A stretch of DNA of 43,577 bases from Macrostomum lignano (Eukaryota), in contig NIVC01004512.1 of NCBI GenBank assembly GCA_002269645.1, positions 1-43,577 on the forward strand, read 5' to 3'. Every line of letters starts with the position of its first letter. Position 1 is the stretch's first letter. The notes beneath the pieces are model-generated. The model worked only from the letters and a program-made list of their open reading frames with translations. It made no database searches and was not told where the DNA came from. The position numbers and the translations under genes are program-made. Shown here in pieces: positions 11,570 to 43,436 of this stretch.

Positions 11570-12010
11570 ATCAGTGATTTGGGATGTGGGATTAGAGATT
11601 TGGGATTAGTAATTTGGGATTAATGGTTTGGGATTAGTAATTTGGGATCTGTGATTTAGAATTAGTGATTTGGGATTAGTGATGTGGAATTAGTGATTTG
11701 AGATCAGTGAGTTGGGATTAGTAATGTGGAATTAGTAAGTTGAGATCATTGATTTGGGATCAATGATTTGGGATCAATGATTTGGGATCAATTATTTTGG
11801 ATCAGTGATTTGGGATCAGTGATATGGTATTAGTAATATGGGATCAGTGATTTGGGATTAGTGATGTGGAATTAGTGATGTGGGATCAGTGATTTGGAAT
11901 CAGTGATTTAGGATTACTGATTTGGGATTTGTAATTTAGGATTAGTAACTTGGCATTAGTGATTTTGGATTAGTGATTTGGGATTATTAATTTCGGATCA
12001 GGATTCGGGA
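11570..12010. repeat. Degenerate 14-bp minisatellite (GATTTGGGATCAGT) between convergent CFAP276 and tetraspanin 3' ends
   Basis: Tandem units are visible. Confidence 0.9.
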
Positions 12011-12279
12011 TCGAATTTTAGGTTCCGAACAAATCCATCACATTTATAGTTCACAAAATACAGTTTAAAGTTCACTGATATTCCAAGAACTACTTAAGTA
12101 TATTACGTTACATTAGTCGTCCTATTCTTTAATACGAGTACTCATAAACAGAAAAATCGGTAATAAAACATTTTTATTGATAAAAAGAATCAGTTAAGGT
12201 TAACAAAAATCACAAATCACTGCAAGTGAAGCAACATATTCATGCAGAAATCAGAGAAGTTGAGAGTTCGAGAATTCGA

Positions 12280-15797
<3,518 letters not shown>

Positions 15798-16124
15798 GAC
15801 TGAAGAATCTCCCAAACAGCCTGGCAATTTCAAAATTCTTGTCTAAAACTCAACGAGCTCTATAGCTCTCTCAGTATACAGTAGAGAAGTGTAGAGACAG
15901 CATGCAACGAGTCTAAACACTGCTCCACATTTTAATCGGCTAGTTAGTAGATAAGGTTTCCTAGGATACAACGGAGTGAACGTGGCCAAAACTGTGCAGA
16001 ATTAAGTACTGTAACTCGACGCCATTTATTGCAAGCGACTTGATAAAAATAAGTATTGTAAACTATAAACGTATGAATTTAGTAAGGTGAGATTCCAGGA
16101 ATCTGCAGATGAGATATAGATGAG

Positions 16125-16880
<756 letters not shown>

Positions 16881-21363: not shown

Positions 21364-21850
<487 letters not shown>

Positions 21851-21879
21851 TATCATCATCATCTTCATCACGCATACAG

Positions 21880-24522: not shown

Positions 24523-25209
24523 CGCAGATGAGGATAATAGCGGCGCTGGTCAGGCATAGCAAAATGGTTGTTTTTTGCATGCTTAAGACTGGCGAAGTTA
24601 GTACGCAGATACTTTATTATTAACGATTGCGTTAAATTTTGTATTAAAATCTAAATCCAATTCAAATTGGCGCGAATGAGGAACGGGTTTTTTTAAACGG
24701 CGGTTAAAACGTCTAAAAAAATCAACAAGTTATTGTAAAACACAGCAATGCGAATTGATTGTCTGCAGAGGAACAAAAGCTTAGGAACTCCTTAAAATTC
24801 ATAATAATGAATATAAGACCGTTGTTGGACACCATGGCACGATGCAGAGACAACATGGGGGGTCGGTGTTTACTGTTTAACCTTTAACCAACCTTTAATA
24901 TAGTATTTAAAGGTTTTCTTAGATTTTGTCTCTCTTTGGCACCAATTTGAATTTGATTTAAATTTAAAGATTTGAATTAGAGTAAAATGATAGAAGTTAA
25001 ACTACAAAATCATTCCAAAATTAACTAATTTCAGTTTTACATCTCCACTATATCCTACGAGTATTCTGTGTGTTTTGTTTTTGCCTCCTATCAGATATCT
25101 TGCTAAATTATTTTTCGACAAGTTTGATATCAAGTTACGAGTAGTTTCGCTTATTCAGGGGTTGGCATTTTTTTACCTCGATGGCCAGGTAAAGAATACA
25201 GCTCATGGC

Positions 25210-25380
25210 CAGATGAGAGAGGAAAGGAGAGGGAATAGAGCAGAGAGAAGAGGAAAGGGGAGATTAGAGGAGATGACGATGAGAGAAGAGATGAGGTGAG
25301 AGATAAAGGAGAGAGAGGACATATGACATAGGATAAGAGAGGAGAGGAGATGAGAGAGGAGAAAAGAGAGCTGAGAAGAG
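25210..25380. repeat. GA-rich low-complexity tract
   Basis: Polypurine stretch with no fixed unit. Confidence 0.7.
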
Positions 25381-28003
25381 ACACAAACCTTGAGCAGGCC
25401 GGATTCATTAGTGAAGTTTTAAAGAATCCGAGAGCCGGAAAAAGAGGCTTCGTTGCATTTTGCCGGACTTTCCGGGTTGATCGGGTTCTGTAATAAAAAC
25501 TGTGATTTTTGTTTGTTGCTTTAAAACCTTGTCTGCGTTCTCTTTACGAGCTTTGTCATTCGATATTCATCTGTCAAATGTGTCTCGCATATTTCTATAC
25601 AATATTCTCTATTATTTTACATGTAATTTGTGTTTTTATTATTCTTATCAGGTTGCTGTGATACAATGACTGCTCTCAGTTAAAATTTTCCATTTCGCCT
25701 TGCTTGACCTTGACCAATGCATATGAGCGTTGGAATTTGGCTGCGTTGGAATTTGGCTGCGTTGGAATTTGGCTTGTTTCATTTAGACTTATTTATATAA
25801 CAGATTTTAGACTGACTTTTAAATATCGAACTTATGCAATATTAACGGCCACTAATATTATTTAATGACATGATCGAAGTAAAATATCAATGACATTTGT
25901 GAATTTTCAGCTAAATGTGCAAAAGCTGACTTTTGAAATCGTTTTAAATACACTTAATGTCTGACATTTCTATAGCGATTTTTGCTGACATGCTTACTGC
26001 TTGAGCTGTCGTGAAATTATCCGGGTCCCGCATTGTCCTCCAAATGTCTTTAATTAATAGAGGCCCACGACTTGCCAGAGGTTCCGGGATCATTGCAATG
26101 CTTATACTTTTACGAGTAGTATCTGGATGTTCTCACGCTTGTCCCAGACCCAGACTAAAACTGGAAATATCTACCTCAACACCAAGGATCACTAGAAGAA
26201 GTGGTCTTCTAGTGGTCCTTGCTCAACACATTTTTAAATGTGTTTTTCAAAAGCAGCAATTTTTCTGAGTCTCGAATGTAGCAACACGGTTATATCAGAA
26301 AATAGGCTACGAACAATTTATTAAAACTAACTTTCTTATTGAAGGAATCTGCGCTATTTTTGTTTTAATGTATGTTTTAACGATTTTAAAATACAAATCA
26401 CTTAGATTTTTGTGCTGATATATAATAATGTTTGTGAGCCGATTTAATGACAATTAATTAAACTTAGGTTTTATATAATAATATATATGTTAATACAATT
26501 TTGATTTAAATTTCAGCATCACTGCTCTCTTCTGTTTGAGTTCTCCGCTGTAAGCCATTGGTAGTTGGTACTGATGTTGCTAGAGACGTAGAGAGGACCA
26601 CTTGTCTTCTTGACCACTTCGGCATCGGCACTTGTCTTACCTTAAAACTAGGCCAGTAAGGCCAAGGGCACACATAGGATAGTGCCCCTTTGCCTGGAAA
26701 TTCTGGCGCACAGAAACCTTCACAGGTCAATACTTTAGCACATGTGGCACATATAGTGTAAATGTGAAGATAGTTTAAAAGCATTTAGCTATAATAAATA
26801 AAAAGTTGCCCTAGGCCTAGCCTATAGCAAGTTGGAAAAGGATTAAATAGTGAAGACTCAAGGAATATATTTGGTACTAGGCCTACTTGAATACCAAATA
26901 GAGGAATGTTATCATTATATTGACTATAAACTTAATTTTTTGTTTTATCAATAATTATAATTGCAATACAAGCTTTATTAACAAGTTGTAAACTTAGTTA
27001 GCTTTATTAAAAATTTTATATGCAATTAATAATAAAAGTTTTTATTACCAAAAGGATAGATATTTGTAGAAAAAGTAAAAAATCATATATCAAAGTCTCT
27101 ATGGCATAAGGCACTTTTTCAAAATTGATCAATCACTTGATCTGCATTAACTGTGCCAACTTCCAGGTGGATATGCAATAGAGATAGAGCTAGTGCATGG
27201 TAATTTCATCTGCTGGCGAGCCATATGAAGAGTTCTTTTGTGATGTTTTTGCATGTATAGGCCCTAATATTGTTTAATGCAATATTTCTAAGAAATATTA
27301 TATTTAATTTAAATATCTATTGAAAAAAGTTTTGTGGCAATCAGTTAGTCATTAGTGAATCAGAAGTTCACATTTGAATATGATTGTGAGCATTGTTATG
27401 ATCCCTAGCCCCATCCCAATCCAATGATGATAATGCATTTGCTATCTTATTGCAAAGTTTATATAAACTTAACTTTGAATTATATAGCCTACCTATGTAT
27501 AAAAGTCAAGTCAACATTTGGTGGGTCTTAAAATAATTTTTAAGACCTTTCAAATTTGTCTCTTTTCTCAGTTGCGCCTGGCTAAGGTCAACTTCAGGGG
27601 GGCAGTTGCCCCTCCCTCTGCTCCCCCCTGTTTCTACCCTTGCAAACACTTCACCTTGTGACCTTTGATGAAAAATAGAAACTTTAAAGAGTTTGTCATT
27701 TCGGAGATAGGAAGTGTTTCATAATATTAATTTGTAGTTATTTTTGTTAAGATATATGTTTCATAAATATCTTGAAAAGTTCTATTGAAAAAATTATTTT
27801 ATTTCCCAGTTTTCTAGAATATTCAAACATAGAGAAGTCTTAACAATAGATAATGATATAAAAGAAAGCTAAAAAATAATAAAATGTTGTTTAAAATTAA
27901 TTAAAAATGATAGTAAAAAATTGTTCTTGGCAAAATGATCATACATAGTACCCTAGACCTACCAGCCTATAGGTTATAGAACTTGTTTCAATGACAAGAT
28001 ACT

Positions 28004-28542
28004 CAGTGTTCGGAGTGGGGGTCCTGCAATTTTTTGCGCCTGAGGTAAATTTTTGCGCCTATGAGTATGCCTAGGGGCGCAGTCTACTGAAAACAACAGG
28101 TAAATCCCGGTAGTGTTCAAATTTTAGCCCTTAAAAGTATTTTCAGTGCCTAAGTTCCTGTACTAATTTCCACAGCACATTTTATATAAACAAAAATAAA
28201 TCCACAGCTGGAAAAACGCAAAAATGATCGCAGGCAAGGACTCCATCATTTAACCCACATCCTAAACATGTGCCTGACTACATTGCATAGCACACAGTAG
28301 AATAGGCAATATATTGTACCGGAAAACAGCACTGACTTGCCTTGCATACTAATATTGGAGAAGAAACCACCCAACAAATTGGAACAACGTTGCGTTGTGC
28401 GCCATTGAGGAGCCAAAAAATGTAAAGATTTGCGCCATTGAGGAGCCAAAAAATTCACGCCATGGCTTCAGAATTCGCGGATTCGCGCCTGTCCGAGCCA
28501 TTTTCGCGCCAAGCACGAATTCGCTCCACGCTCTGAACACTG
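28004..28542. mobile_element. hAT-type non-autonomous element, 539 bp
   Basis: Termini CAGTGTTCGGAGTG...CGCTCTGAACACTG. Perfect 8-bp TSD AAGATACT at 27996-28003 and 28543-28550. An 8-bp TSD with CAG..CTG ends is the hAT signature. Confidence 0.85.
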
Positions 28543-29075
28543 AAGATACTTTGGTGACAAGAAGACCCTATTGGTGATAGCCATTGCAGTTTCAAACATA
28601 AAATTATCTTGCCAATCTTGCATTGATTTATTTAATTCTGTTTATTTACTTTATAGAGTTACAATCTATTGTATTTATTTTACCTTTTCTAAACCCTATT
28701 GTTTTTCTTGTGATACTGATAGGCATTTTATGATTGATAAAAAATCTAATATAGCCAAAATGGCCAAAACCTTTGCAACAAAGCCTAAAGTCTGTCTTAG
28801 GCCTAAAATGCATAGAAAGACCATAGAAAAACATTTTTTGCCATTTTTGCTATAACCAATGCCTTTAATTCCTTTTTCTTATAGTAAAAATAATTTACTA
28901 TATTAAAAGTTGTTTCAAAGCAAAGCAAAGCAAAAGTTTTTTCTCAATGACAAAAAGTCCAATTAGAATTAAAGTCAACAGTGGTAGAAAATTGACTAGC
29001 TAGGTTTACTTTTGAAATAAGATAGAAAAAATATTGTAGTATATGATTAGGGATTAAATTAGTAAGTAGCTATAG

Positions 29076-29361
29076 CATACATGCGCAACAGTCGGCCGAG
29101 TCGGCCGATCCGGCCGACCGATTTGGTGGCCAACCTTGGAAGTCGCAAAAATGCCCACCCGAAAAACACCAAGTAGTAGTACTAAGTAGCTGACGAGGCA
29201 TTTTTGCTTTGTAAGACACTCATAGTTACTCCTGCCATTTACCCAAAGTTGCGTTAATTGCGTTTTTACATGTAAGTCGCATTTTTGGCCAACAACTACG
29301 TCGCATTTTTGTTAAAACTAAGTCGCACGGCCGACCGAATTTTGAAGGTCGCGCATGTATG
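29076..29361. mobile_element. hAT-type MITE, 286 bp
   Basis: TIRs CATACATGCGC...GCGCATGTATG. Perfect 8-bp TSD AGCTATAG at 29068-29075 and 29362-29369. Subterminal CGGCCG motifs. Confidence 0.85.
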
Positions 29362-29407
29362 AGCTATAGCCATAATTATAATGTTACTACTAGATGGGTT
29401 ATATAGG

Positions 29408-31073
29408 CTGATATCTGATTTATTACAGAGCAATCTTTGATATCTGGTTTATTACAGAGCAATCTTTGATATCTGGTTTATTACAGAGCAATCTTTGATA
29501 TCTGGTTTATTACAGAGAAATCTTTGATATCTGATTATCTATTACAGAGAAATCTTTGATATCAGATTATCTATTACAGAGCAATCTTTGATATCTGATT
29601 ATCTATTACAGAGCAATCTTTGATATCTGGTTTATTACAGAGCAATCTTTGATATCTGGTTTATTACAGAGCAATCTTTGATATCTGGTTTATTACAGAG
29701 CAATCTTTGATATCTGGTTTATTACAGAGCAATCTTTGATATCTGGTTTATTACAGAGCAATCTTTGATATCTGGTTTATTACAGAGCAATCTTTGATAT
29801 CTGGTTTATTACAGAGCAGTCTTTGATATCTGGTTTATTACAGAGCAATCTTTGATATCTGGTTTATTACAGAGCAATCTTTGATATCTGGTTTATTACA
29901 GAGCAATCTTTGATATCTGGTTTATTACAGAGCAATCTTTGATATCTGGTTTATTACAGAGCAATCTTTGATATCTGGTTTATTACAGAGCAATCTTTGA
30001 TATCTGGTTTATTACAGAGCAATCTTTGATATCTGGTTTATTACAGAGCAATCTTTGATATCTGGTTTATTACAGAGCAATCTTTGATATCTGGTTTATT
30101 ACAGAGCAATCTTTGATATCTGGTTTATTACAGAGCAATCTTTGATATCTGGTTTATTACAGAGCAATCTTTGATATCTGGTTTATTACAGAGCAATCTT
30201 TGATATCTGGTTTATTACAGAGCAATCTTTGATATCTGGTTTATTACAGAGCAATCTTTGATATCTGGTTTATTACAGAGCAATCTTTGATATCTGGTTT
30301 ATTACAGAGCAATCTTTGATATCTGGTTTATTACAGAGCAATCTTTGATATCTGGTTTATTACAGAGCAGTCTTTGATATCTGGTTTATTACAGAGCAAT
30401 CTTTGATATCTGGTTTATTACAGAGCAATCTTTGATATCTGGTTTATTACAGAGCAATCTTTGATATCTGGTTTATTACAGAGCAATCTTTGATATCTGG
30501 TTTATTACAGAGCAATCTTTGATATCTGGTTTATTACAGAGCAATCTTTGATATCTGGTTTATTACAGAGCAATCTTTGATATCTGGTTTATTACAGAGC
30601 AATCTTTGATATCTGGTTTATTACAGAGCAATCTTTGATATCTGGTTTATTACAGAGCAATCTTTGATATCTGGTTTATTACAGAGCAATCTTTGATATC
30701 TGGTTTATTACAGAGCAATCTTTGATATCTGGTTTATTACAGAGCAATCTTTGATATCTGGTTTATTACAGAGCAATCTTTGATATCTGGTTTATTACAG
30801 AGCAATCTTTGATATCTGGTTTATTACAGAGCAATCTTTGATATCTGGTTTATTACAGAGGAATCTTTGATATCTGGTTTATTACAGAGCAATCTTTGAT
30901 ATCTGGTTTATTACAGAGCAATCTTTGATATCTGGTTTATTACAGAGCAATCTTTGATATCTGGTTTATTACAGAGCAATCTTTGATATCTGGTTTATTA
31001 CAGAGCAATCTTTGATATCTGGTTTATTACAGAGCAATCTTTGATATCTGGTTTATTACAGAGCAATCTTTGA
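29408..31073. repeat. Highly homogeneous 29-bp satellite (CTGGTTTATTACAGAGCAATCTTTGATAT), about 57 copies, ending 7 bp before the RBM33-like ATG
   Basis: Head-to-tail identical units with no spacers. Confidence 0.97.
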
Positions 31074-31080
31074 AAATTGA

Positions 31081-34000
31081 ATGTCTCGCTATCGCTACGC
31101 CAACGATCTGGATCTTGAGCCAGACGATATTGATGATGATGACGAAGAATTCGTTCTAGAACATCGAGTTGGCCTGACAGCATCGGCTGCTACTGCCAGT
31201 GGCGGAACTAATAGCGATGTTGGTCGCTACCAGCTCACAGAAGAGGATGAAGAACAGCTGCTGGGCAGCGATGCGGAGTCTTGCGACGGAACGGCTGCTC
31301 CGGCTGCAACTGCCCAGCTGATAGGCAGTCTTAATAGCGTCGACAACGACAATAGTAATACTAATAATAATAATAGTAACCAAATTGAATGCAGCGATAA
31401 TAATAGTAATAATAATAATGATAATAATAATGCCGACGGAGTCGATCTACACGACGAAGACGATCCCGACGCTATTGTTGTCGGCGTTGATATCGACGAC
31501 GAGGATGTCGATGATCTGTTGCAACTCTCCGCTGGCGAAGACGATATTGACGATGAAGCGCCTGCCGCCCAGCCTGCCGCTGGTCGGTCGCCCATTGCCG
31601 TCAAGCGGAAAGCATCCTCGCCAATGCCGCCGCCGACTGCCCCGCCTCAGCCAGCGGCATCAGTCGCCAACGACAGCATCGGCAGCAGCTCCAAGGCTTC
31701 AATAATGAATTCACCCGAATTACTGACTAAAAACGGCATAGTAACCATCAAGCGTCCAGAATTGCCAAAGCCGCTTGCACACAGTCAGCAGTCGAGTTCG
31801 TCTGCCAGCGCTCAGCTACCAGTAGACGATGACTACGAGCGACGCTACGAAGAATTAAAAGAGAAGCAAGCTCGAATCCGGCGCATGATACAGAATAAGA
31901 AAGAGCAGAATAGACTGGCTCGGGTTGGAGCGGCTGCTCCTAAGCCTCAGCAGCCTCAGGCTCAGCCGCCGCAGGCGCCTCAGCAGCGGCAGAATCAGAT
32001 TCGACCTTCAACTGGTCCCGCTGGTCCCCGCGCTGGAATAGCGGCCCGGGCGCCAATAGCCGCTGTTCCGACAAAGCCTTTGATGCAGCAGCAGCAGCAG
32101 AGGCCTGTGCGACCTCCATTTGTACCGCCGCAGCAGCAGCGGCCGTTTGTTCAAAGAGCCGCTCCGGCCGCAACCAGTCTGCTGCAGCAGCATCGCGGCC
32201 AGCTGCCCCGACAGGCTCCAATCAACTCGCTGTTTAACAATCACCAGCTCAGGCAGCCGATGCCCAACCAGCAGCAGCAACTGTTCATGCCGGCCTTCTC
32301 AATGTCATCGATTACATCATCGGTTGTCGCCAATGTTGTCGCTTCCGCCGTGTCAGCCGGCGTTGCTCACGGTCGTCGGTCTGTTCGCATCGCCAACTGT
32401 CCGCCTGGCACCGGGCCTAACGATTTAAAAGTCTATACTGAGCTGGTGGGGCCTGTGCAGGTACGCATGGTTGAGTTCTTGTGCTGCTGTCTCTTGTTTT
32501 CTGTGCTTTAAAGTGTGCTGAGTAGTTAATGGGGTGGCTAAGAGCGTAGCTGAGTGTCTATTAATGTAGCTGAAGGGGTAGCTGAGTGTCTATAGATGTA
32601 GTTGAAGGGGTAGCTGAGTGTATAAATGGTTGCTGAGTGTTGATTAAGGGTAGCTGAAGGGTTAGCTGACTGTACGAGTATAAATGGTTGCTGAGTGTCT
32701 TTAGATGTAGCTAAGTAGGATGTGGGAGGCTGAGTGTATAAATGATTGCTGAGTGTTGATAAAGGGTAGCTGCAGGGGTAGCTGAGTGTCTATAGATGTA
32801 GCTGCAGGGGTAGCTGAGTGTCTATAGATGTAGCTTAAGGGATAGCTGAGTGTCTATAGATGTAGCTTAAGGGATAGCTGAGTGTCTATAGATGTAGCTG
32901 AAGGAGTAGCTGAGTGTCTATAGATGTAGCTTAAGGGATAGCTAAGTGTCTATAGATGTAGCTTAAGGGATAGCTGAGTGTCTATAGATGTAGCTTAAGG
33001 GATAGCTGAGTGTCTATAGATGTAGCTGAAGGGGTAGCTGAGTGTCTATAGATGTAGCTGAAGGGGTAGCTGAGTGTCTGTAGATGTAGCTGAAGGGATA
33101 GTGAGTGTCTATAGATGTAGCTTAAGGGATAGCTGAGTGTCTATAGATGTAGCTTAAGGGGTAGCTGAGTGTCTATAGATGTAGCTGAAGGGGTAGCTGA
33201 GTGTCTATAGATGTAGCTGAAGGGGTAGCTGAGTGTCTATAGATGTAGCTGAAGGGGTAGCTGAGTGTCTATAGATGTAGCTGAAGGGGTAGCTGAGTGT
33301 CTATAGATGTAGCTGAAGGGGTAGCTGAGTGTCTATAGATGTAGTTGAAGGGGTAACTACTAAGGGATTCCGTATGGCTTGATTTTGGAGGTGGGGTGGG
33401 TGTCAACCCTCCTCGCCTCTCATTGGCTGGCGCCCCGATCACTAGGTGATCGATACCCGTATCGATATCGGCGACTCGAACCCGCGACCCTCCCCAGCCG
33501 CAGGCGCACCTACCGATATTAGATCCCAATAAATCAATCAGATCCCAAATCAATCAGATCCCAAATCAATCAGATCCCAAGCGCACCCTCCCGAGCCGCA
33601 GGCGCCCATGCAGCAGGCGCCCATGCCGCAGGCACCCCGAGTGTACACTCTCCCGATATGTGTGTACACCGATATGTAGTCATCGATACGGGCCTCTTCC
33701 CCTCTCTCACCTACATCTCAACTAGCGAAATCGAACCCAGGTCGCGCCCATACTAGGACACTACACGGTTGTGGGGTATAGGGAGCGAGAAGTTTCAACC
33801 CTAACGCTGACGCAGCCCTGTACAGTGAGAGTGTACGGGCAGAGAGGGGTGGGGCGGACAGAGAACCAGCCACTAGGTTGTTATACTGTTGAAGCATAGG
33901 GAGCGAGAAGTTTTAACCCCGATGCTGACGCAGCCCTGTACACTGAGCGTGTACGGGCAGAGGGTGGGTGGAAAGAGATGTGAATAACACAGCCTGCTGC

Positions 34001-37000
34001 AGGAGCCGGATAGAGAGGCGCATGCTAGGACAGAGAGGTAGTGTGAGTCACACACACCCCACAGAGAAAGCCATACAGAGGATAGAGAGCTCCCTCCCCA
34101 GTTGCAGGGGACAGAGAGGCAGGCAGGGTATGCAGGGGCATGCGAACCGTCAAGGGGCCACGCGAGGATAGAGTGGAGGAGCAGAGATGTGTTTGGACAG
34201 AGAGCCAGCCACGTGTGCGTAGTGTGAGGGAACAGAAACATATGGAGCAGGAGGGAGATAGGAAGCAAACGCGCAGGGTAAGGGAGCCATGCAGCAGGGA
34301 GCAGTGTACAGTGAGACACGGGCAGGGGTGGAGCCGTGCGTGGACAGAGCTGAACGGCACGGTCAGCTGCAGGAATAGGATGATAGAGAGGCGCGGAGGG
34401 GGACAGAGAGCAGTGTGCAGGGTAGGCAGCCACGCAGGCTGGGGAACAGAGAGGCGCGTGTCAGCCAGTTACAGCCCGGGACAGAGAAGTATGAAGGGGG
34501 GCCTGGGACAGAGAAGTATGAAGGGGGGCCTGGGACAGAGTTGCGAGCAAGGCACAGAGAGAGGTAGGGTCCGGTAGCTATGTATAGGCAGGGACCCACG
34601 CGAGGGCAGGACAGGGCATGCAAGGCATGCAAATTACATGCAAGGGCAGTGAGGTGTGCGCGGAGGGAGACAGAGAGCAGTGTGTAGGGGTAGGTAACAG
34701 CAAACTTTAGTAGAGGCGCGTGCGGGGACGGAGAAACCAGTCTGAACGTACAGAGACGTTACAGAGAGGTACACAAACAGAGACCAAAGCGGGCAGAGCA
34801 CGTGTAGGGACAGAGACGTGAGGGAGAATAGACCAAAACACGCTATGTATTTTCAAAAGTTGGTTTTAGTGCAGCATATTTAATAGCGGGTAGTATAATA
34901 GTATGTACATAGTAGGTATAATGGTAGTAATAATAGTAAGTATATTAGCCCAAAAGGTAGGCTAAAACAGGCTAAACTGTGTGTACGCATCCTCATCACC
35001 CCACAAGCCCCCTCTCCCGCCAGACTCACTCTTCCATACCCTCCTGTATTGCTGTATGAAGGAAAATATAGTGTAAAAATACAGATCTTAACCGTCAGAC
35101 CGCTGAAATCAGGGCACACTAGAGGGGTTTCGGGGTCTGCATGCTCTATGTAAGCTGTTTCAATTATGTTTTGAAAAAACTAGGGGCTTAAATACAACGT
35201 TTTATTCAAAAAGTAGGTTATTTTAATGAAATAGCTGACACAATCATTGTCGAGAGTAGAAATTTTTATAAGAAACCAGGCATTTTAGCAAAAATAAACC
35301 TTCAAACCACATAAAATTGAATAAAAAGCAGACATTTTCAATTATAAACCGCAAGTATTTTAATAGAAAAGTAAGCAAACAAGGCACAAAACCAGCAAAT
35401 TTTACCTTTTTATTTTAATGTTACTGATAAGGTAGAGAGTAGAAACTTGTGAGCTGTACGGAGTTAGAAAGTATTAACCATTATGTATCGTATGAATTAT
35501 TAGTTCAGTACCAGCCATTGGTCAAGCGAGCATTTATGAAGTTATTACGAGTGATGAAGGGATAGAGAGCTATATACAGGAAGACAGTATCCTTCTAAAC
35601 CACCACGAACAGATTGCTAATAGAGATAAGCTTTGTCTGTGTGCAGTATGAGTAAGCGAAGGCGGGGCAAATACTTTTCCACATGCCGGACAGAACAGTA
35701 TTGTGCTAGGATTTCTCTCGAAATCACGGTACGTTACTAGTTTTTATCACACCATCCAGATGCGTCAACTAGTCAGCAGTAGTCATTTATATGTTATTAG
35801 AACTTACAAACCCAGGTCAAGTAAATATTACAAAGAGTATATTACGTACACACGCCAACTCCGAATACCAAGCCATACTAGTCTACTTGCAGTGCTCCTG
35901 GAGGGAAGGGACGGCGGGGTGTACACCCGGCAGGGTGGGCGTCCAGCGAGTGTACATCTGACAGGATGGGTGTTCAGCAAGTGTACATCTGACAGGGTGG
36001 GCGTTCAGCAAGTGTACCTTCAGCGTCGAGTAGGTGTACACCCGTCAGTGGGGAACTCCACCCCTCCCACCAATGTCGTGTGCATGCGGTTAGTCAGTAT
36101 AGTGGTGGGGTAGACGGTGCAGGAAGGAAACCCAGATGCTGACGCTGCCCTGTACAGCGAGCAACCAGCCCCCTGTAGCAGGGGGGGACAGAGAGTGCGT
36201 GGAGGCAGTAGGAGATAGAGGACGCTACCCGGCATGTCGCAGCACGCGGCGCGGGACAGAGGCAGTGTGTAAGTCACCCCCGCGGAGAGAGCTCCCCTGG
36301 CAGGAGGCGCGGGACAGAGAGGCGGTGAATCACACCCCACGGAGAGAGCCGTACAACGAGCTTCCCCACCCGAGTCCGGTAAATATTACAGAGTATTACG
36401 TGCACACACCAGCCCTGAATACCAAGCCATACTAGTCTATCTGCAGTGCTCCCAGAGGGAAGGGATGGTCAGGAGTTACACACCAAGAATGCATTCATAC
36501 AAAGAGTACACAACTCGAGCCCAGACACCAAGTCACAGTCTACTTACAGTAGAGATGGTAGATTAATAGCAAGATTATATTACAATTAGACCTCTCTAGC
36601 ACATGAGGAGTGAAATTCAATAATAATTGAATTCAATAATAATACAACATTTAGACGTAGTAATTTAATTACAAAATACCACTAACACTGAGCCAACGAA
36701 TTGTAGGTTACAAAGGAGTTGCCACTCATATGGAAAGCCAGTATAATGCAGGTGTGTATTATTAAAACATAGACAAAAACGATGCAGACGTATATACACA
36801 CTATTGATTTTGTACATGTACATTTCGGCATATTACCACACATCGCGGGCACATATTATATATCGGGGGATAGGTTAAAATACACACATCGTAGATGTAG
36901 AAGCAGACACAATGCAGGAAAATTATGATACGAGTGTACATATTAGTGCGTAAAAGTATCATATTATGACACCCTGTAGCACATATTGACATAATGCAGG

Positions 37001-40000
37001 GGAAAATATTGACAGAAATAGTACACAATTGTAGAGGTAACAACCAGCCAACTAGTAAGGGCATCCAGCACTTGTTCAGGTTTTTTTTATTTCGAGACGA
37101 GTGTCATGCCCCCGCAAGAGATCTTATCAGAAATTTGTTGAACTCCACTGCAACTCTCCCCAGAGCCTCCAAATGGGAGTTTTAACACTTGAGGGGATCC
37201 CGCTCAATGTACAGTGCGGACGGAGAGGGGTAACAGAAAGCGCTGCATCAGACCGCGGAGCTGCATTCCTCCCCGAGGTAGGCGCGTCAGCTCCCACTCC
37301 TCATTTAACCATCAAGTAAACTAAAGAAGTCAAGCAGAAAGCCTTACAATCACCCGCAACCAGCACAAGTAAGAGTACTTTCCACTAGAGAGCCATAGTG
37401 CAAGATTCGCGAGCCAAGTTGAAGAAGCACACCAAATTACACTAAAGACATATGTATTAAAAAGCATACCGGCACCTCTACAAAAACACAGTATGTACCG
37501 ATTAAAGTTGCTTTTGGTGCAGTGTATTTAATAAAAAGCAGGTACCTAACACAAAAGTAGGCATCAATGCAGTGCACGGGCTAAACTGTATTTACAAACG
37601 CAGGGCAACGAACTACACACAATGTAGCGCATAGACATAATTGTACACATAAATGTACGCAATTTCCGGTATATAGGACCAAATGTACGCAAATGTACAC
37701 AATGTACACAAACACACACACACTCAGGCGTATTCACAGCAAGAGCTTCCTGCCGATGGCGCCATCGCCTGCGGCGATCGGTGCTGCAGGATGCGCTGCA
37801 GGATGCGCCTGAGTGTGTGTGTGTTTGTGTGCATTGTGTACATTTGCGTACATTTGGTCCTATATACCGGAGATTGCGTACATTTATGTGTACAATTATG
37901 TCTATGCGCTACATTGTGTGTAGTTCGTTGCCCTGCGTTTGTAAATACAGTTTAGCCCGTGCACTGCATTGATGCCTACTTTTGTGTTAGGTACCTGCTT
38001 TTTATTAAATACACTGCACCAAAAGCAACTTTAATCGGTACATACTGTGTTTTTGTAGAGGTGCCGGTATGCTTTTTAATACATATGTCTTTAGTGTAAT
38101 TTGGTGTGCTTCTTCAACTTGGCTCGCGAATCTTGCACTATGGCTCTCTAGTGGAAAGTACTCTTACTTGTGCTGGTTGCGGGTGATTGTAAGGCTTTCT
38201 GCTTGACTTCTTTAGTTTACTTGATGGTTAAATGAGGAGTGGGAGCTGACGCGCCTACCTCGGGGGAGGAATGCAGCTCCGCGGTCTGATGCAGCGCTTT
38301 CTGTTACCCCTCTCCGTCCGCACTGTACATTGAGCGGGATCCCCTCAAGTGTTAAAACTCCATTTGGAGGCTCTGGGAGAGTTGCAGTGGAGTTCAACAA
38401 ATTTCTGATAAGATCTCTTGCGGGGCATGACACTCGTCTCGAAATAAAAAAAACCTGAACAAGTGCTGGATGCCCTTACTAGTTGGCTGGTTGTTACCTC
38501 TACAATTGTGTACTATTTCTGTCAATATTTTCCCCTGCATTATGTCAATATGTGCTACAGGGTGTCATAATATGATACTTTTACGCACTAATATGTACAC
38601 TCGTATCATAATTTTCCTGCATTGTGTCTGCTTCTACATCTACGATGTGTGTATTTTAACCTATCCCCCGATATATAATATGTGCCCGCGATGTGTGGTA
38701 ATATGCCGAAATGTACATGTACAAAATCAATAGTGTGTATATACGTCTGCATCGTTTTTGTCTATGTTTTAATAATACACACCTGCATTATACTGGCTTT
38801 CCATATGAGTGGCAACTCCTTTGTAACCTACAATTCGTTGGCTCAGTGTTAGTGGTATTTTGTAATTAAATTACTACGTCTAAATGTTGTATTATTATTG
38901 AATTCAATTATTATTGAATTTCACTCCTCATGTGCTAGAGAGGTCTAATTGTAATATAATCTTGCTATTAATCTACCATCTCTACTGTAAGTAGACTGTG
39001 ACTTGGTGTCTGGGCTCGAGTTGTGTACTCTTTGTATGAATGCATTCTTGGTGTGTAACTCCTGACCATCCCTTCCCTCTGGGAGCACTGCAGATAGACT
39101 AGTATGGCTTGGTATTCAGGGCTGGTGTGTGCACGTAATACTCTGTAATATTTACCGGACTCGGGTGGGGAAGCTCGTTGTACGGCTCTCTCCGTGGGGT
39201 GTGATTCACCGCCTCTCTGTCCCGCGCCTCCTGCCAGGGGAGCTCTCTCCGCGGGGGTGACTTACACACTGCCTCTGTCCCGCGCCGCGTGCTGCGACAT
39301 GCCGGGTAGCGTCCTCTATCTCCTACTGCCTCCACGCACTCTCTGTCCCCCTCCTGCTACAGGGGGCTGGTTGCTCGCTGTACAGGGCAGCGTCAGCATC
39401 TGGGTTTCCTTCCTGCACCGTCTACCCCACCACTATACTGACTAACCGCATGCACACGACATTGGTGGGAGGGGTGGAGTTCCCCACTGACGGGTGTACA
39501 CCTACTCGACGCTGAAGGTACACTTGCTGAACGCCCACCCTGTCAGATGTACACTTGCTGAACACCCATCCTGTCAGATGTACACTCGCTGGACGCCCAC
39601 CCTGCCGGTGTACACCCCGCCGTCCCTTCCCTCCAGGAGCACTGCAAGTAGACTAGTATGGCTTGGTATTCGGAGTTGGCGTGTGTACGTAATATACTCT
39701 TTGTAATATTTACTTGACCTGGGTTTGTAAGTTCTAATAACATATAAATGACTACTGCTGACTAGTTGACGCATCTGGATGGTGTGATAAAAACTAGTAA
39801 CGTACCGTGATTTCGAGAGAAATCCTAGCACAATACTGTTCTGTCCGGCATGTGGAAAAGTATTTGCCCCGCCTTCGCTTACTCATACTGCACACAGACA
39901 AAGCTTATCTCTATTAGCAATCTGTTCGTGGTGGTTTAGAAGGATACTGTCTTCCTGTATATAGCTCTCTATCCCTTCATCACTCGTAATAACTTCATAA

Positions 40001-43000
40001 ATGCTCGCTTGACCAATGGCTGGTACTGAACTAATAATTCATACGATACATAATGGTTAATACTTTCTAACTCCGTACAGCTCACAAGTTTCTACTCTCT
40101 ACCTTATCAGTAACATTAAAATAAAAAGGTAAAATTTGCTGGTTTTGTGCCTTGTTTGCTTACTTTTCTATTAAAATACTTGCGGTTTATAATTGAAAAT
40201 GTCTGCTTTTTATTCAATTTTATGTGGTTTGAAGGTTTATTTTTGCTAAAATGCCTGGTTTCTTATAAAAATTTCTACTCTCGACAATGATTGTGTCAGC
40301 TATTTCATTAAAATAACCTACTTTTTGAATAAAACGTTGTATTTAAGCCCCTAGTTTTTTCAAAACATAATTGAAACAGCTTACATAGAGCATGCAGACC
40401 CCGAAACCCCTCTAGTGTGCCCTGATTTCAGCGGTCTGACGGTTAAGATCTGTATTTTTACACTATATTTTCCTTCATACAGCAATACAGGAGGGTATGG
40501 AAGAGTGAGTCTGGCGGGAGAGGGGGCTTGTGGGGTGATGAGGATGCGTACACACAGTTTAGCCTGTTTTAGCCTACCTTTTGGGCTAATATACTTACTA
40601 TTATTACTACCATTATACCTACTATGTACATACTATTATACTACCCGCTATTAAATATGCTGCACTAAAACCAACTTTTGAAAATACATAGCGTGTTTTG
40701 GTCTATTCTCCCTCACGTCTCTGTCCCTACACGTGCTCTGCCCGCTTTGGTCTCTGTTTGTGTACCTCTCTGTAACGTCTCTGTACGCTCAGACTGGTTT
40801 CTCCGTCCCGCACGCGCCTCTACTAAAGTTTGCTGTTACCTACCCCTACACACTGCTCTCTGTCTCCCTCCGCGCACACCTCACTGCCCTTGCATGTAAT
40901 TTGCATGCCTTGCATGCCCTGTCCTGCCCTCGCGTGGGTCCCTGCCTATACATAGCTACCGGACCCTACCTCTCTCTGTGCCTTGCTCGCAACTCTGTCC
41001 CAGGCCCCCCTTCATACTTCTCTGTCCCAGGCCCCCCTTCATACTTCTCTGTCCCGGGCTGTAACTGGCTGACACGCGCCTCTCTGTTCCCCAGCCTGCG
41101 TGGCTGCCTACCCTGCACACTGCTCTCTGTCCCCCTCCGCGCCTCTCTATCATCCTATTCCTGCAGCTGACCGTGCCGTTCAGCTCTGTCCACGCACGGC
41201 TCCACCCCTGCCCGTGTCTCACTGTACACTGCTCCCTGCTGCATGGCTCCCTTACCCTGCGCGTTTGCTTCCTATCTCCCTCCTGCTCCATATGTTTCTG
41301 TTCCCTCACACTACGCACACGTGGCTGGCTCTCTGTCCAAACACATCTCTGCTCCTCCACTCTATCCTCGCGTGGCCCCTTGACGGTTCGCATGCCCCTG
41401 CATACCCTGCCTGCCTCTCTGTCCCCTGCAACTGGGGAGGGAGCTCTCTATCCTCTGTATGGCTTTCTCTGTGGGGTGTGTGTGACTCACACTACCTCTC
41501 TGTCCTAGCATGCGCCTCTCTATCCGGCTCCTGCAGCAGGCTGTGTTATTCACATCTCTTTCCACCCACCCTCTGCCCGTACACGCTCAGTGTACAGGGC
41601 TGCGTCAGCATCGGGGTTAAAACTTCTCGCTCCCTATGCTTCAACAGTATAACAACCTAGTGGCTGGTTCTCTGTCCGCCCCACCCCTCTCTGCCCGTAC
41701 ACTCTCACTGTACAGGGCTGCGTCAGCGTTAGGGTTGAAACTTCTCGCTCCCTATACCCCACAACCGTGTAGTGTCCTAGTATGGGCGCGACCTGGGTTC
41801 GATTTCGCTAGTTGAGATGTAGGTGAGAGAGGGGAAGAGGCCCGTATCGATGACTACATATCGGTGTACACACATATCGGGAGAGTGTACACTCGGGGTG
41901 CCTGCGGCATGGGCGCCTGCTGCATGGGCGCCTGCGGCTCGGGAGGGTGCGCTTGGGATCTGATTGATTTGGGATCTGATTGATTTGGGATCTGATTGAT
42001 TTATTGGGATCTAATATCGGTAGGTGCGCCTGCGGCTGGGGAGGGTCGCGGTTCGAGTCGCCGATATCGATACGGGTATCGATCACCTAGTGATCGGGCG
42101 CCAGCCAATGAGAGGCGAGGAGGGTTGACACCCACCTCACAAAATCAAGCCATACGGAATCCCTTAGTAGTGGGTAGCTGAGTGTATAAATGGTTGCTGA
42201 GTGTTGATTAAGGGTAGCTGAAGGGTTAGCTGACTGTACGAGTATAAATGGTTGCTGAGTGTCTTTAGATGTAGCTAAGTAGGATGTGGAGGCTGAGTGT
42301 ATAAATGATTGCTGAGTGTTGATAAAGGGTAGCTGCAGGGGTAGCTGAGTGTCTATAGATGTAGCTGCAGGGTAGCTGAGTGTCTATAGATGTAGCTGCA
42401 GGGGTAGCTGAGTGTCTATAGATGTAGCTGCAGGGGTAGCTGAGTGTCTATAGATGTAGCTGAAGGGTAGCTGAGTTCTATAGATGTAGCTGAAGGGGTA
42501 GCTGAGTGTCTATAGATGTAGCTGAAGGGTAGTTGAGTGTCTATAGATGTAGTTGAAGGGGTAGCTGAGTGTATAAAATGGTTGCTGAGTGTTGATTAAG
42601 GGTAGCTGAAGGGTTAGCTGACTGTACGAGTATAAATGGTTGCTGAGTGTCTTTAGATGTAGCTAAGTAGGATGTGGGAGGCTGAGTGTATAAATGATTG
42701 CTGAGTGTTGATAAATGGTAGCTGCAGGGGTAGCTGAGTGTCTATAGATGTAGCTGAAGGGTAGCTGAGTGTCTATAGATGTAGCTGAAGGGGTAGCTGA
42801 GTGTCTATAGATGTAGCTGAATGGGTAGCTGAGTGTCTATAGATGTAGCTGAAGGGTAGCTGAGTGTCTATAGATGTAGCTGAAGAGGTAGCTGAGTGTC
42901 TATAGATGTAGCTGAAGGGTAGCTGAGTGTCTATAGATGTAGCTGAAGGGGTTGCTGAGTGTCTATAGATGTAGCTGAAGGGGTAGCTGAGTGTCTATAG

Positions 43001-43436
43001 ATGTAGCTGAAGGGTTGCTGAGTGTCTATAGATGTAGCTGAAGGGGTTGCTGAGTGTCTATAGATGTAGCTGAAGGGGTTGCTGAGTGTCTATAGATGTA
43101 GCTGAAGGGGTAGCTGAGTCGGACTGTCTACCTCCGACTCAAGGGTAGCTGAGGTGCGCGCCTGTACACCGGACTGAAACTGGGCCAGTTACTAACTAAG
43201 CTAAGCCTCCGAAAACCCTCAGAACTGCCAAGTGTACCCCAACAATGGCCAGGCTTACATCACATTCTGCTATCCTGAGCATGCGCAAGAGTTTCTTCAG
43301 AGATTCAATCGGTAATTGATGAGAATATTTATATTTGTTCTCTCAAAGATTGCATTGTACTTACAAATTTCATGACTCCTTTGTTTCTTTCAGAGCGCAC
43401 CTGAAAGGCTACCAACTGCAGCTGACCCTATGCTAA
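31081..43436 (+). CDS. RBM33-like RNA-binding protein: acidic N-terminus, coiled coil, P/Q-rich region, C-terminal RRM split over three exons
   Basis: Exons 31081-32460, 43223-43311 and 43394-43436 have consistent phases (0, 2) across a 10.76-kb intron 1. The spliced RRM is SVRIANCPPGTGPNDLKVYTELVGPVQ|NCQVYPNNGQAYITFCYPEHAQEFLQRFNR|AHLKGYQLQLTLC*. It resembles the recalled RBM33 C-terminal RRM (..VGPIQ..EPAHALAFQQKFHRH..). Orthology is from memory, so no symbol is given. Confidence 0.8.
32520..33355. repeat. 32-bp satellite (TAGCTGAGTGTCTATAGATGTAGCTGAAGGGG), left of the palindrome
   Basis: Tandem units in intron 1 of the RBM33-like gene. Confidence 0.95.
33356..42171. mobile_element. 8.8-kb palindromic (foldback-like) non-coding insertion; arms 33356-37730 and 37806-42171, spacer 37731-37805
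   Basis: The right arm is the reverse complement of the left along its length. Mirrored ORF pairs in the track confirm this, e.g. 33873-34433/41100-41660, 34880-35119/40415-40654 and 36801-37064/38470-38733. Termini are ACTACTAAGGGATTCCGTATGG...CCATACGGAATCCCTTAGTAGT, with GGGTA on both sides. Confidence 0.92.
42172..43115. repeat. Same 32-bp satellite, right of the palindrome, same orientation
   Basis: The array resumes in register after the duplicated GGGTA. Confidence 0.95.

What the first reader, a model, noticed from the sequence alone, without database searches (positions are those of the whole stretch)
33356..42171. An 8.8-kb mobile element that is essentially one giant palindrome
Seen: two ~4.37-kb arms in inverted orientation, near-identical, separated by only 75 bp. 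The host 32-bp satellite continues in the same orientation on both sides, and the empty site GTTGAAGGGGTAGCTGAGTGTATAAA can be reconstructed; that same sequence occurs intact near 32600 and 42550. This indicates a clean insertion rather than a chromosomal inversion-duplication. There is no transposase, RT, integrase, Rep or PolB ORF; the longest ORF is 186 aa and not protein-like. Known: Foldback/Galileo elements and MITEs have long TIRs, but arms this long with almost no loop are exceptional. Inference: a non-autonomous element family made by snap-back (hairpin-primed) copying of a ~4.4-kb monomer and mobilised in trans. It may be an undescribed foldback-type system.
Basis: partly seen in the sequence, partly recalled or inferred. 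Interest (0 to 1): 0.92.

Follow-up and report, generated by a model that had tools for sequence, protein, structure and literature searches.

The report
Foldback-type transposon insertion in a flatworm intron
An 8.8-kb, non-coding, almost perfectly palindromic mobile element sits in an intron of a Macrostomum lignano gene; the same site is empty in another copy of the locus, so it is a real and recent insertion, but elements built like this are already known.

Summary
Window 33356-42171 (8816 bp) consists of two arms of about 4.37 kb in inverted orientation. They differ by 4 substitutions plus homopolymer-length indels and are joined by a 69-77-nt imperfect centre. The element is flanked by a 5-bp target-site duplication (GGGTA) inside a 32-bp host satellite.

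The window is the whole contig NIVC01004512.1 of the Macrostomum lignano Mlig_3_7 assembly. The element lies in a 10.8-kb intron that splits the RRM domain of gene Mlig006594.g3.

A second copy of the locus in the same assembly (L005) carries the exact uninterrupted target site. All satellite landmarks sit at identical offsets from the exon, and the flank is 99.55% identical.

No coding or RNA-family signal exists in any frame of the arm.

The most likely explanation is a young, non-autonomous foldback-type cut-and-paste element, moved by a transposase that makes 5-bp staggered cuts.

The claim that the structure is exceptional or undescribed is not supported. Galileo copy 112 of Drosophila willistoni is 9021 bp and made only of two TIRs of 4246 and 4680 bp.

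Copy number, superfamily and autonomous partner could not be tested.

The parts
33351..33355 (.). Left copy of the 5-bp target-site duplication GGGTA
   Evidence: Read directly. Removing exactly 5 bp gives the best match to the intact sites.
33356..37730 (+). Left arm (4375 bp), non-coding, heterogeneous composition (GC 32-65%, purine-rich block 33856-34856)
33356..33386 (+). Outermost 31 bp of the terminal inverted repeat, identical at both ends (ACTACTAAGGGATTCCGTATGGCTTGATTTTG)
33449..33690 (.). Subterminal cluster of short motifs: ATCGATA/TATCGAT x4 and CCGATAT/ATATCGG x4 within the first 350 bp, against 0-1 in the other 4 kb. Candidate transposase-binding sites (inferred).
33521..33580 (+). 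Subterminal 16-bp tandem repeat (3.1-3.5 copies), mirrored at 41953-42002. Further short tandem repeats lie at 34474-34552 and 35919-36017.
37731..37807 (.). Imperfect centre (spacer) of 77 nt. It is weakly self-complementary, with the symmetry axis near 37768-37770, and contains a tandem GCTGCAGGATGC duplication.
37808..42171 (-). Right arm (4364 bp), reverse complement of the left arm
42172..42176 (.). Right copy of the 5-bp target-site duplication GGGTA
32546..33355 (+). Host 32-bp satellite (with an approximately 180-bp variant block, higher-order repeat) to the left of the insertion. A paralogous intact target lies at 32601-32626.
42172..43119 (+). The same satellite, in the same orientation, to the right of the insertion. 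A paralogous intact target lies at 42552-42577.
32461..43222 (+). Host intron (10762 bp, phase 0) of RRM gene BOX15_Mlig006594g3. It contains the satellite and the element and splits the RRM domain.

Best explanation
The feature is a young, non-autonomous, foldback-type class II (cut-and-paste) transposable element of Macrostomum lignano.

Shown:
- An 8816-bp block of DNA foreign to the locus is inserted in a satellite inside an intron.
- The same terminus faces outward at both ends.
- It carries a perfect 5-bp target-site duplication.
- The identical site is uninterrupted in another copy of the locus in the same genome.
- The block has no coding capacity. Its arms are practically identical. 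It has subterminal short-motif clusters and short tandem repeats.

Inferred:
1. The whole palindrome was integrated as one unit by a DDE-type transposase or integrase that makes 5-bp staggered cuts. The enzyme is supplied in trans and recognises the 31-bp identical termini and the subterminal ATCGATA/CCGATAT motifs.
2. The palindrome arose earlier from one end-half of a parental element. One route is a break inside the element followed by resection, fold-back of the 3' end at a short inverted repeat, and copying of the arm. This is the ssDNA-hairpin mechanism documented for foldback inversions. The other route is TIR extension by template switching or gene conversion during gap repair, as described for Galileo.
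3. The asymmetric centre of about 77 nt is either the original loop or a later centre modification. Either way it lowers cruciform and hairpin formation and lets the palindrome persist.
4. Because it sits in an intron, the pre-mRNA should contain a 4.4-kb perfect hairpin, a likely source of dsRNA and small RNAs.
For: - Palindrome, termini and TSD.
- True empty site. L005 carries GTTGAAGGGGTAGCTGAGTGTATAAA at 12270, and every satellite landmark sits at the same offset from the exon as in the window (129...872, site at +895). The reconstructed empty site matches L005 at 1226 of 1238 positions, and the 100 bp around the junction are 100% identical. The left flank is 99.55% identical to L005 with no gaps.
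- The arm has no similarity to L004, L005 or the rest of the window, so it is foreign DNA.
- No Pfam, Rfam or tRNA signal.
- Subterminal motif cluster. Tandem repeats inside the arms.
- Youth. There are 4 substitutions in 4375 bp between the arms, against 4 in 895 bp between the window and its closest homologous copy. The TSD is perfect.
- Precedents for the architecture and for TIR extension: Galileo copy 112 (PMC4168063); Tm1/FB (PMC3169594).
- Hairpin-primed foldback mechanism: PMC7467729.
- Spacer effect on palindrome stability: PMC3300023.
- DNA transposons make up 3.05% of this genome.
Against: - Only one copy is seen. No tool could search the rest of the M. lignano genome, so 'family', 'mobilised in trans' and the existence of an autonomous partner are untested.
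- The termini (ACTACT...) match none of the groups known to give 5-bp TSDs. Transib has CAC..., Ginger/TDD and LTR elements have TG..., so the superfamily is unknown.
- The assembly is PacBio CLR + Canu + Pilon, with only about 64% error-free bases by REAPR.
- The contig is short, and the palindrome ends 1406 bp from its end.
- The right arm and right flank show deletion-biased homopolymer differences.
- The contig is a mosaic of the two other haplotypes.
- Read-level confirmation is therefore missing.
Confidence: 0.72

Rival explanations
1. Assembly artefact. A missed-adapter (fold-back) PacBio read, or a chimeric Canu join, created the second arm, and the real allele has one arm or a different internal part.
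For: - The assembly is PacBio CLR assembled with Canu 1.4, and REAPR scores 63.95% of bases error-free.
- The window is a whole 43.6-kb contig, and the palindrome ends 1.4 kb from its end.
- The right arm and right satellite carry more 1-bp deletions.
- The contig is a mosaic of L004-like and L005-like sequence.
Against: - A fold-back read inverts the flank as well. Here the right flank continues the satellite in the same orientation and runs on into exons 2 and 3 of the gene, as in L004 and L005.
- The palindrome's ends coincide to the base with a 5-bp TSD at a site that is intact in L005.
- The inserted DNA is absent from the other copies of the locus, so it cannot have been produced by copying local sequence.
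- The centre does not resemble SMRTbell or ONT adapters; local alignment scores are 6 or less. The adapter sequences were taken from memory.
- A join between a chimeric read and true reads would need at least 500 bp of shared right-end sequence, so the element would have long TIRs in any case.
Confidence: 0.08
2. One-off capture. A palindromic extrachromosomal DNA fragment, such as a replicated hairpin-capped fragment, was ligated into a staggered double-strand break, with no transposase and no element family.
For: - Only one copy is visible.
- The termini fit no known superfamily.
- Fill-in of a 5-nt staggered break would also give a 5-bp duplication.
Against: - End-joining captures rarely leave perfectly symmetric ends with a clean TSD and no filler or deletion.
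- The 31-bp identical termini plus a cluster of short subterminal motifs look like transposase recognition ends.
- Identical architectures are known to transpose.
Confidence: 0.1
3. The element is old, and its arms are kept identical by continuing arm-to-arm gene conversion, as in sex-chromosome palindromes. It is not a young insertion.
For: Divergence is about 0.1% in the arms but roughly 30% in the central 77 nt. The three T/C differences (37664, 37705, 37731) lie within 70 bp of, or at, the edge of the centre.
Against: - The homologous site in L005 is empty although its flank is 99.55% identical, so the insertion is younger than that split.
- The TSD is perfect.
Confidence: 0.08

Closest known systems
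Galileo long-TIR copies (P superfamily), e.g. copy 112 of Drosophila willistoni (PMC4168063)
   Same: Both are about 9-kb elements made only of two inverted arms of more than 4 kb (copy 112: 9021 bp; TIRs 4246 and 4680 bp). Both lack a transposase segment and are flanked by identical TSDs. Both arms hold short tandem repeats and heterogeneous sequence. In Galileo the TIRs are reported to extend by gap-repair errors and transfer between arms.
   Different: Galileo gives 7-8-bp TSDs, here 5 bp. The terminal sequences are unrelated. The arms of copy 112 differ by about 430 bp in repeat content, whereas here they are about 99.9% identical. The host here is a flatworm, not an insect. No transposase link is known here.
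Foldback (FB) of Drosophila and Tm1 of Meloidogyne (Mutator-related foldback elements; PMC3169594)
   Same: Both have composite long TIRs with subterminal tandem repeats, non-coding members mobilised in trans, and paralogous empty sites used as evidence.
   Different: These give 9-bp TSDs, here 5 bp. Their TIRs are mostly arrays of 13-15-bp repeats, whereas here the sequence is mostly unique. Tm1 TIR pairs average 93% identity.
Mu killer of maize (PMC3440606)
   Same: Both have two copies of the same transposon terminus facing outward and an inverted duplication of the adjoining internal segment. Mu killer is proposed to give a hairpin RNA of about 4 kb, and its centre was recalcitrant to sequencing.
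   Different: Mu killer derives from a known autonomous element and duplicates coding sequence. It is a single locus and is not known to have transposed as a unit. Here a TSD around the whole palindrome indicates integration as one unit.
C. elegans 'palindromic' Repbase repeats (PAL5A_CE, PALTTAA3_CE, IR3_CE; PMC6239182)
   Same: Both are non-autonomous elements that are essentially palindromes, are common in introns and form dsRNA. From memory, the digit in PAL5A denotes a 5-bp TSD.
   Different: From memory, the C. elegans repeats are much shorter, hundreds of bp to a few kb. No sequence relation was tested.
Transib and Ginger2/TDD-4/5 (DNA transposons with 5-bp TSDs; PMC1131882, PMC2836005)
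   Same: All give a 5-bp target-site duplication. Transib also prefers GC-rich targets, and the target here is GGGTA in a satellite of about 50% GC.
   Different: Transib termini start with an invariant CAC (CACAATG). Ginger/TDD termini follow TGTNR. This element starts ACTACTA.
Foldback inversions formed through ssDNA hairpins at resected breaks (S. cerevisiae; PMC7467729)
   Same: The product is an inverted duplication with a short unique loop at the centre, so this is a candidate route to the palindrome.
   Different: Those are chromosomal rearrangements, not mobile units. The hairpin step is inferred here, not shown.

Membership tests
Foldback-type / long-TIR non-autonomous class II element (structural category) | Inverted terminal repeats that make up most or all of the element | tested here: met
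   The arms are 4375 and 4364 bp of 8816 bp.
Foldback-type / long-TIR non-autonomous class II element (structural category) | Target-site duplication flanking the whole unit, with an empty site available | tested here: met
   The TSD is the 5-bp GGGTA. An empty homologous site lies in L005 and paralogous sites lie in the window.
Foldback-type / long-TIR non-autonomous class II element (structural category) | No transposase or other coding capacity | tested here: met
   The six-frame Pfam scan gives 0 hits at E<=1. The ORFs give 0 hits.
Foldback-type / long-TIR non-autonomous class II element (structural category) | Dispersed multi-copy family sharing the termini | not testable with these tools
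   There are no further copies in the window, L004 or L005. The rest of the M. lignano genome could not be searched by DNA. The metagenome scan found 0.
Foldback-type / long-TIR non-autonomous class II element (structural category) | An autonomous relative that encodes the transposase | not testable with these tools
   There is no access to the whole genome. The protein search appears blind to the source genome (versus 78).
Drosophila FB / Tm1 (Mutator-related foldback) | 9-bp (8-10 bp) TSD | tested here: not met
   The TSD is 5 bp. The 9 bp on each side differ. Family feature from PMC3169594.
Galileo / P superfamily | 7-8-bp TSD | tested here: not met
   The TSD is 5 bp. Family feature from PMC4168063.
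Transib | 5-bp TSD | tested here: met
   Family feature from PMC1131882.
Transib | Termini CACAATG with invariant CAC at positions 1-3 | tested here: not met
   The terminus is ACTACTA. Family feature.
Ginger2/TDD and LTR-integrase elements | Termini TGTNR / TG...CA | tested here: not met
   The termini are ACTAC...GTAGT. Family feature from PMC2836005.
LTR retrotransposon | Direct LTRs and gag/pol coding sequence | tested here: not met
   The repeats are inverted, not direct. There is no RT, IN or RNase H signal.
Missed-adapter / fold-back read artefact | Flanks inverted together with the arms, adapter at the centre, and duplicated sequence native to the locus | tested here: not met
   The flanks are collinear and run into exons 2-3. 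The centre is unlike the adapters. The arm is absent from the homologous loci.

The most novel reading that the evidence does not exclude
The element represents an undescribed flatworm transposon group with 5-bp TSDs and ACTACT termini. In this reading the palindromic form is not an accident but the normal product of its propagation. A half-length or single-stranded intermediate would regenerate the second arm by hairpin-primed synthesis at each cycle. That would explain the near-identity of the arms next to a diverged centre.
Probability: 0.06. Interest if true: 0.75.

Novelty: new member of a known kind. Interest (0 to 1): 0.3.

Why it matters
- The insertion is present in one copy of a locus and absent from another in the inbred DV1 line. 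This indicates a DNA transposon that was active recently in Macrostomum lignano, a regeneration model in which transposon-based transgenesis has so far not worked. Finding its transposase could give an endogenous tool.
- The locus is a natural test case for how a metazoan tolerates an 8.8-kb near-perfect palindrome in an expressed gene. Open questions are DNA stability, splicing across a 4.4-kb RNA hairpin, and small-RNA production.
- For genome annotation, it shows that such palindromes in PacBio assemblies can be real and need not be discarded as fold-back artefacts.

Tried and rejected
- Coding content. Ten ORFs and all six frames of the arm were scanned against Pfam, with no hit.
- RNA genes. 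Rfam at gathering thresholds found nothing. At E<=1 it found only a sub-threshold mir-3149 match at the centre, 45 bits against a gathering score of 100, which is simply the GT/AC hairpin. ARAGORN at default settings found none. A relaxed-threshold 'tRNA-Ile' at 33420-33503 is at chance level, with 87 hits in 50 shuffled arms.
- Other copies.
  - Exact-product look-ups of five arm ORFs failed, including the one crossing the centre, as did the unspliced host ORF.
  - A homologue search with the 186-aa arm ORF found nothing. This null is uninformative, because that tool never returned M. lignano proteins of this locus (versus 78).
  - The terminus 22-mer and the host satellite 30-mer both found 0 in the metagenome contigs.
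  - A terminus 17-mer gave 2 matches in viral contigs, the number expected by chance.
- Contamination or vector. There was no match to plasmids or phages.
- Literature. Terminus strings gave only chance primer matches. My last search was badly set and returned no Macrostomum paper. Wasik et al. 2015 is not held.
- Spacer as a priming hairpin. The 77-nt spacer alone does not fold better than shuffles (z -1.48; 14 of 200). Its self-complementarity is marginal (15 of 500 shuffles). The snap-back origin therefore stays an inference.


Full report
**1.

Five collinear inverted segments of 99-100% complementarity tile 33482-37733 against 37803-42051. A global alignment of the two halves sets the element at 33356-42171, 8816 bp, with arms 33356-37730 and 37808-42171.

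Outside the centre the arms differ by 4 substitutions, one 4-bp indel (33387-33390, in a GGTG-type repeat) and nine 1-bp indels. All nine lie in G or C homopolymers, and the right arm is the shorter one in 7 of 9.

The termini ACTACTAAGGGATTCCGTATGG / its complement occur only at these two places, even with 3 mismatches allowed, and 0 are expected by chance. The outermost 31 bp are identical. The centre is 69 nt to 77 nt, depending on how its mismatched edges are counted.

**2. It is an insertion with a 5-bp target-site duplication**

The left flank ends ...GTTGAAGGGGTA and the right flank starts GGGTAGCTGAGTGTATAAA.... The 32-bp satellite has the same consensus and orientation on both sides. 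The uninterrupted 26-mer occurs at 32601 and 42552.

Removing 0-8 bp in turn shows that removing exactly 5 bp gives the best score and the fewest gap blocks against both paralogous sites. The site lies at the unique start of an approximately 180-bp variant block of a higher-order repeat. The duplication is therefore not a satellite register effect.

**3. Where the window comes from, and a true empty site**

A search of the unspliced host ORF against the representative library returned a 503-aa protein, 100% identical over residues 1-461. It is PAA47271.1, BOX15_Mlig006594g3 of Macrostomum lignano. It is encoded on NIVC01004512.1 of GCA_002269645.1, a contig of 43,577 bp, which means the window is the whole contig.

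The gene model is:
- exon 1, 31081-32460
- intron, 32461-43222 (10,762 bp, phase 0)
- exon 2, 43223-43311
- exon 3, from 43394

The spliced C-terminus is an RRM_1 domain (E 5e-7, above the Pfam cut-off), so the intron splits the RRM.

Two further copies of the gene exist in the same assembly. Their gene spans are 2435 bp (L004) and 4573 bp (L005), against 12,356 bp here. Neither contains the terminus (allowing up to 7 mismatches) or any arm sequence.

L005 carries the 26-mer target four times. Its second occurrence, 12270, lies at +895 from the exon-intron anchor, exactly where the interrupted target lies in the window. All eleven preceding 32-mer landmarks are at identical offsets, 129 to 872.

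The reconstructed empty site matches L005 at 1226 of 1238 positions, with 100/100 identity around the junction. The 895-bp left flank is 99.55% identical with no gaps.

The DV1 line has extra large chromosomes, and the assembly holds 180 Mb of blocks at least 95% identical. I cannot say whether L005 is an allele or a duplicated-chromosome copy.

**4. What the arms contain**

- There is no Pfam hit for ten ORFs or for any of six full-frame translations at E<=1, and each frame has 55-78 stops.
- There is no Rfam family at gathering thresholds and no tRNA.
- A relaxed-threshold tRNA-like hit is at chance level.
- There is no similarity to plasmids or phages.
- There is none to the rest of the window, except a 65-bp, 78% match of a subterminal 16-bp repeat to a host 14-bp satellite.
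- Composition is patchy: GC 32-65%, with a purine-rich block at 33856-34856.
- There are short tandem repeats of 16, 27 and 31 bp and a few dispersed direct repeats.
- The first 350 bp hold four ATCGATA/TATCGAT and four CCGATAT/ATATCGG motifs, against 0-1 in the remaining 4 kb. This is the pattern expected of subterminal transposase-binding sites. That reading is an inference.

**5. The centre**

The 77-nt spacer aligns with its own reverse complement better than most shuffles (score 22 against -2.2 +/- 11; 15 of 500 reach it). The axis lies near 37768-37770.

Taken alone, however, the spacer does not fold significantly better than shuffles (z -1.48). So the centre may be a decayed continuation of the palindrome, or it may be the original loop of a fold-back. 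The data do not decide.

It does not resemble SMRTbell or ONT adapters. The adapter sequences were taken from memory, and alignment scores were 6 or less.

**6. Is it an assembly artefact?**

The assembly is PacBio CLR, Canu 1.4 and Pilon, and REAPR scores 63.95% of bases error-free.

Four points argue for caution:
- The contig is short.
- The palindrome ends 1406 bp from the contig end.
- The right arm and right satellite show deletion-biased homopolymer differences.
- The contig is 99.2-99.8% L004-like up to about 29.4 kb and L005-like in the intron.

A fold-back read would nevertheless invert the flank, and it can only duplicate sequence native to the locus. Neither applies here:
- The right flank continues the satellite in the same orientation and runs into exons 2 and 3.
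- The boundaries coincide with a TSD at a site that is intact in L005.
- The inserted DNA is absent from the other copies.

I put the artefact at about 8%. Read-level confirmation is still needed.

**7. Mechanism**

Shown: a foreign palindromic block with identical outward termini was integrated as a unit, with a 5-bp duplication, after the split from the L005 copy.

Inferred:
- Integration was by a DDE-type enzyme making 5-bp staggered cuts, supplied in trans.
- The palindrome formed earlier from one end-half of a parental element. One route is resection, ssDNA fold-back at a short inverted repeat and extension, as shown for foldback inversions in yeast (PMC7467729). The other is TIR extension during gap repair, as proposed for Galileo (PMC4168063).
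- An asymmetric centre of this size should reduce hairpin formation. A 320-bp inverted repeat stalls forks with a 0 or 12-bp spacer but not with a 52-bp spacer, and centre-break revision is known (PMC3300023).
- The intronic position predicts a 4.4-kb RNA hairpin, as proposed for Mu killer (PMC3440606) and for C. elegans palindromic repeats in introns (PMC6239182).

**8. Comparison with what is known**

The architecture is not new. Galileo copy 112 of D. willistoni is 9021 bp, made only of TIRs of 4246 and 4680 bp, has no transposase segment and has identical TSDs.

Membership in specific families fails:
- FB/Tm1 need 9-bp TSDs.
- Galileo needs 7-8 bp.
- Transib shares the 5-bp TSD but has invariant CAC termini.
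- Ginger/TDD and LTR elements have TG... termini.

The superfamily is therefore unknown. DNA transposons are 3.05% and LTR elements 20.69% of this genome.

**9. Limits**

No tool searches the M. lignano genome by DNA. Copy number, other TSDs and the autonomous partner are untested.

The protein-homologue tool never returned M. lignano proteins of this locus, although they exist. Its null result for an arm ORF therefore says nothing about other copies.

**10. Verdict**

This is a real and recent insertion of a non-coding foldback-type element in a flatworm intron. It is a new member of a known kind, and interest is moderate to low. The useful leads are a possibly active endogenous transposase in M. 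lignano and a natural long palindrome in an expressed gene.

Noticed in passing
window 23132-33355 compared with L004 and L005: The contig is a mosaic. 23132-29400 is 99.2-99.8% identical to L004 but 92-97.5% to L005. The intron part 32461-33355 is 99.55% identical to L005 but 89-95% to L004. The switch lies in or near the 29-bp satellite 29409-31073. This is either recombination between homologous copies or a chimeric Canu contig.
   Followed up: partly
window 37808-43119: The right arm and the right-hand satellite carry many more 1-bp homopolymer deletions than the left side. TRF reports 6% indels against 0%, and the right arm is shorter in 7 of 9 homopolymer differences. This suggests poorly polished PacBio consensus near the contig end.
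   Followed up: partly
window 32546-33355 and 42172-43119; L005:11387-14256: The 32-bp intronic satellite has a higher-order structure, with an approximately 180-bp variant block recurring every 390-745 bp. The number of blocks differs between copies of the locus: 3 in the window, 4 in L005 and none in L004, whose intron is only about 0.8 kb.
   Followed up: partly
window 33521-33580 and 11583-12011: The subterminal 16-bp tandem repeat of the element (AAATCAATCAGATCCC) is 78% similar over 65 bp to a host 14-bp satellite (GATTTGGGATTAGT) elsewhere in the window. This may be chance, or a link between the element's repeats and host satellites.
   Followed up: no
window 16116-16880 and 21367-21854: Long (ATAG)n (about 192 copies) and (TCTA)n (about 124 copies) arrays are reverse complements of one another and bracket about 4.5 kb.
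   Followed up: no
window 23132-24271: The PDE9A-like exon ORF runs on in frame into a 28-bp minisatellite (23717-24157). Almost every intron and intergenic stretch of the window is filled with mini- or microsatellites (44 TRF rows), in line with tandem repeats making up 15% of this genome.
   Followed up: no
tool behaviour: the search for homologous proteins listed no M. lignano protein of this locus for window-encoded queries, whereas search of protein representatives returned the window's own annotated protein. Null results of the former should not be read as absence from the source genome.
   Followed up: yes
window 37706-37830: There is a sub-threshold Rfam match to mir-3149 on both strands (45 bits; gathering score 100). 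It is explained by the GT/AC-rich hairpin at the palindrome centre.
   Followed up: yes
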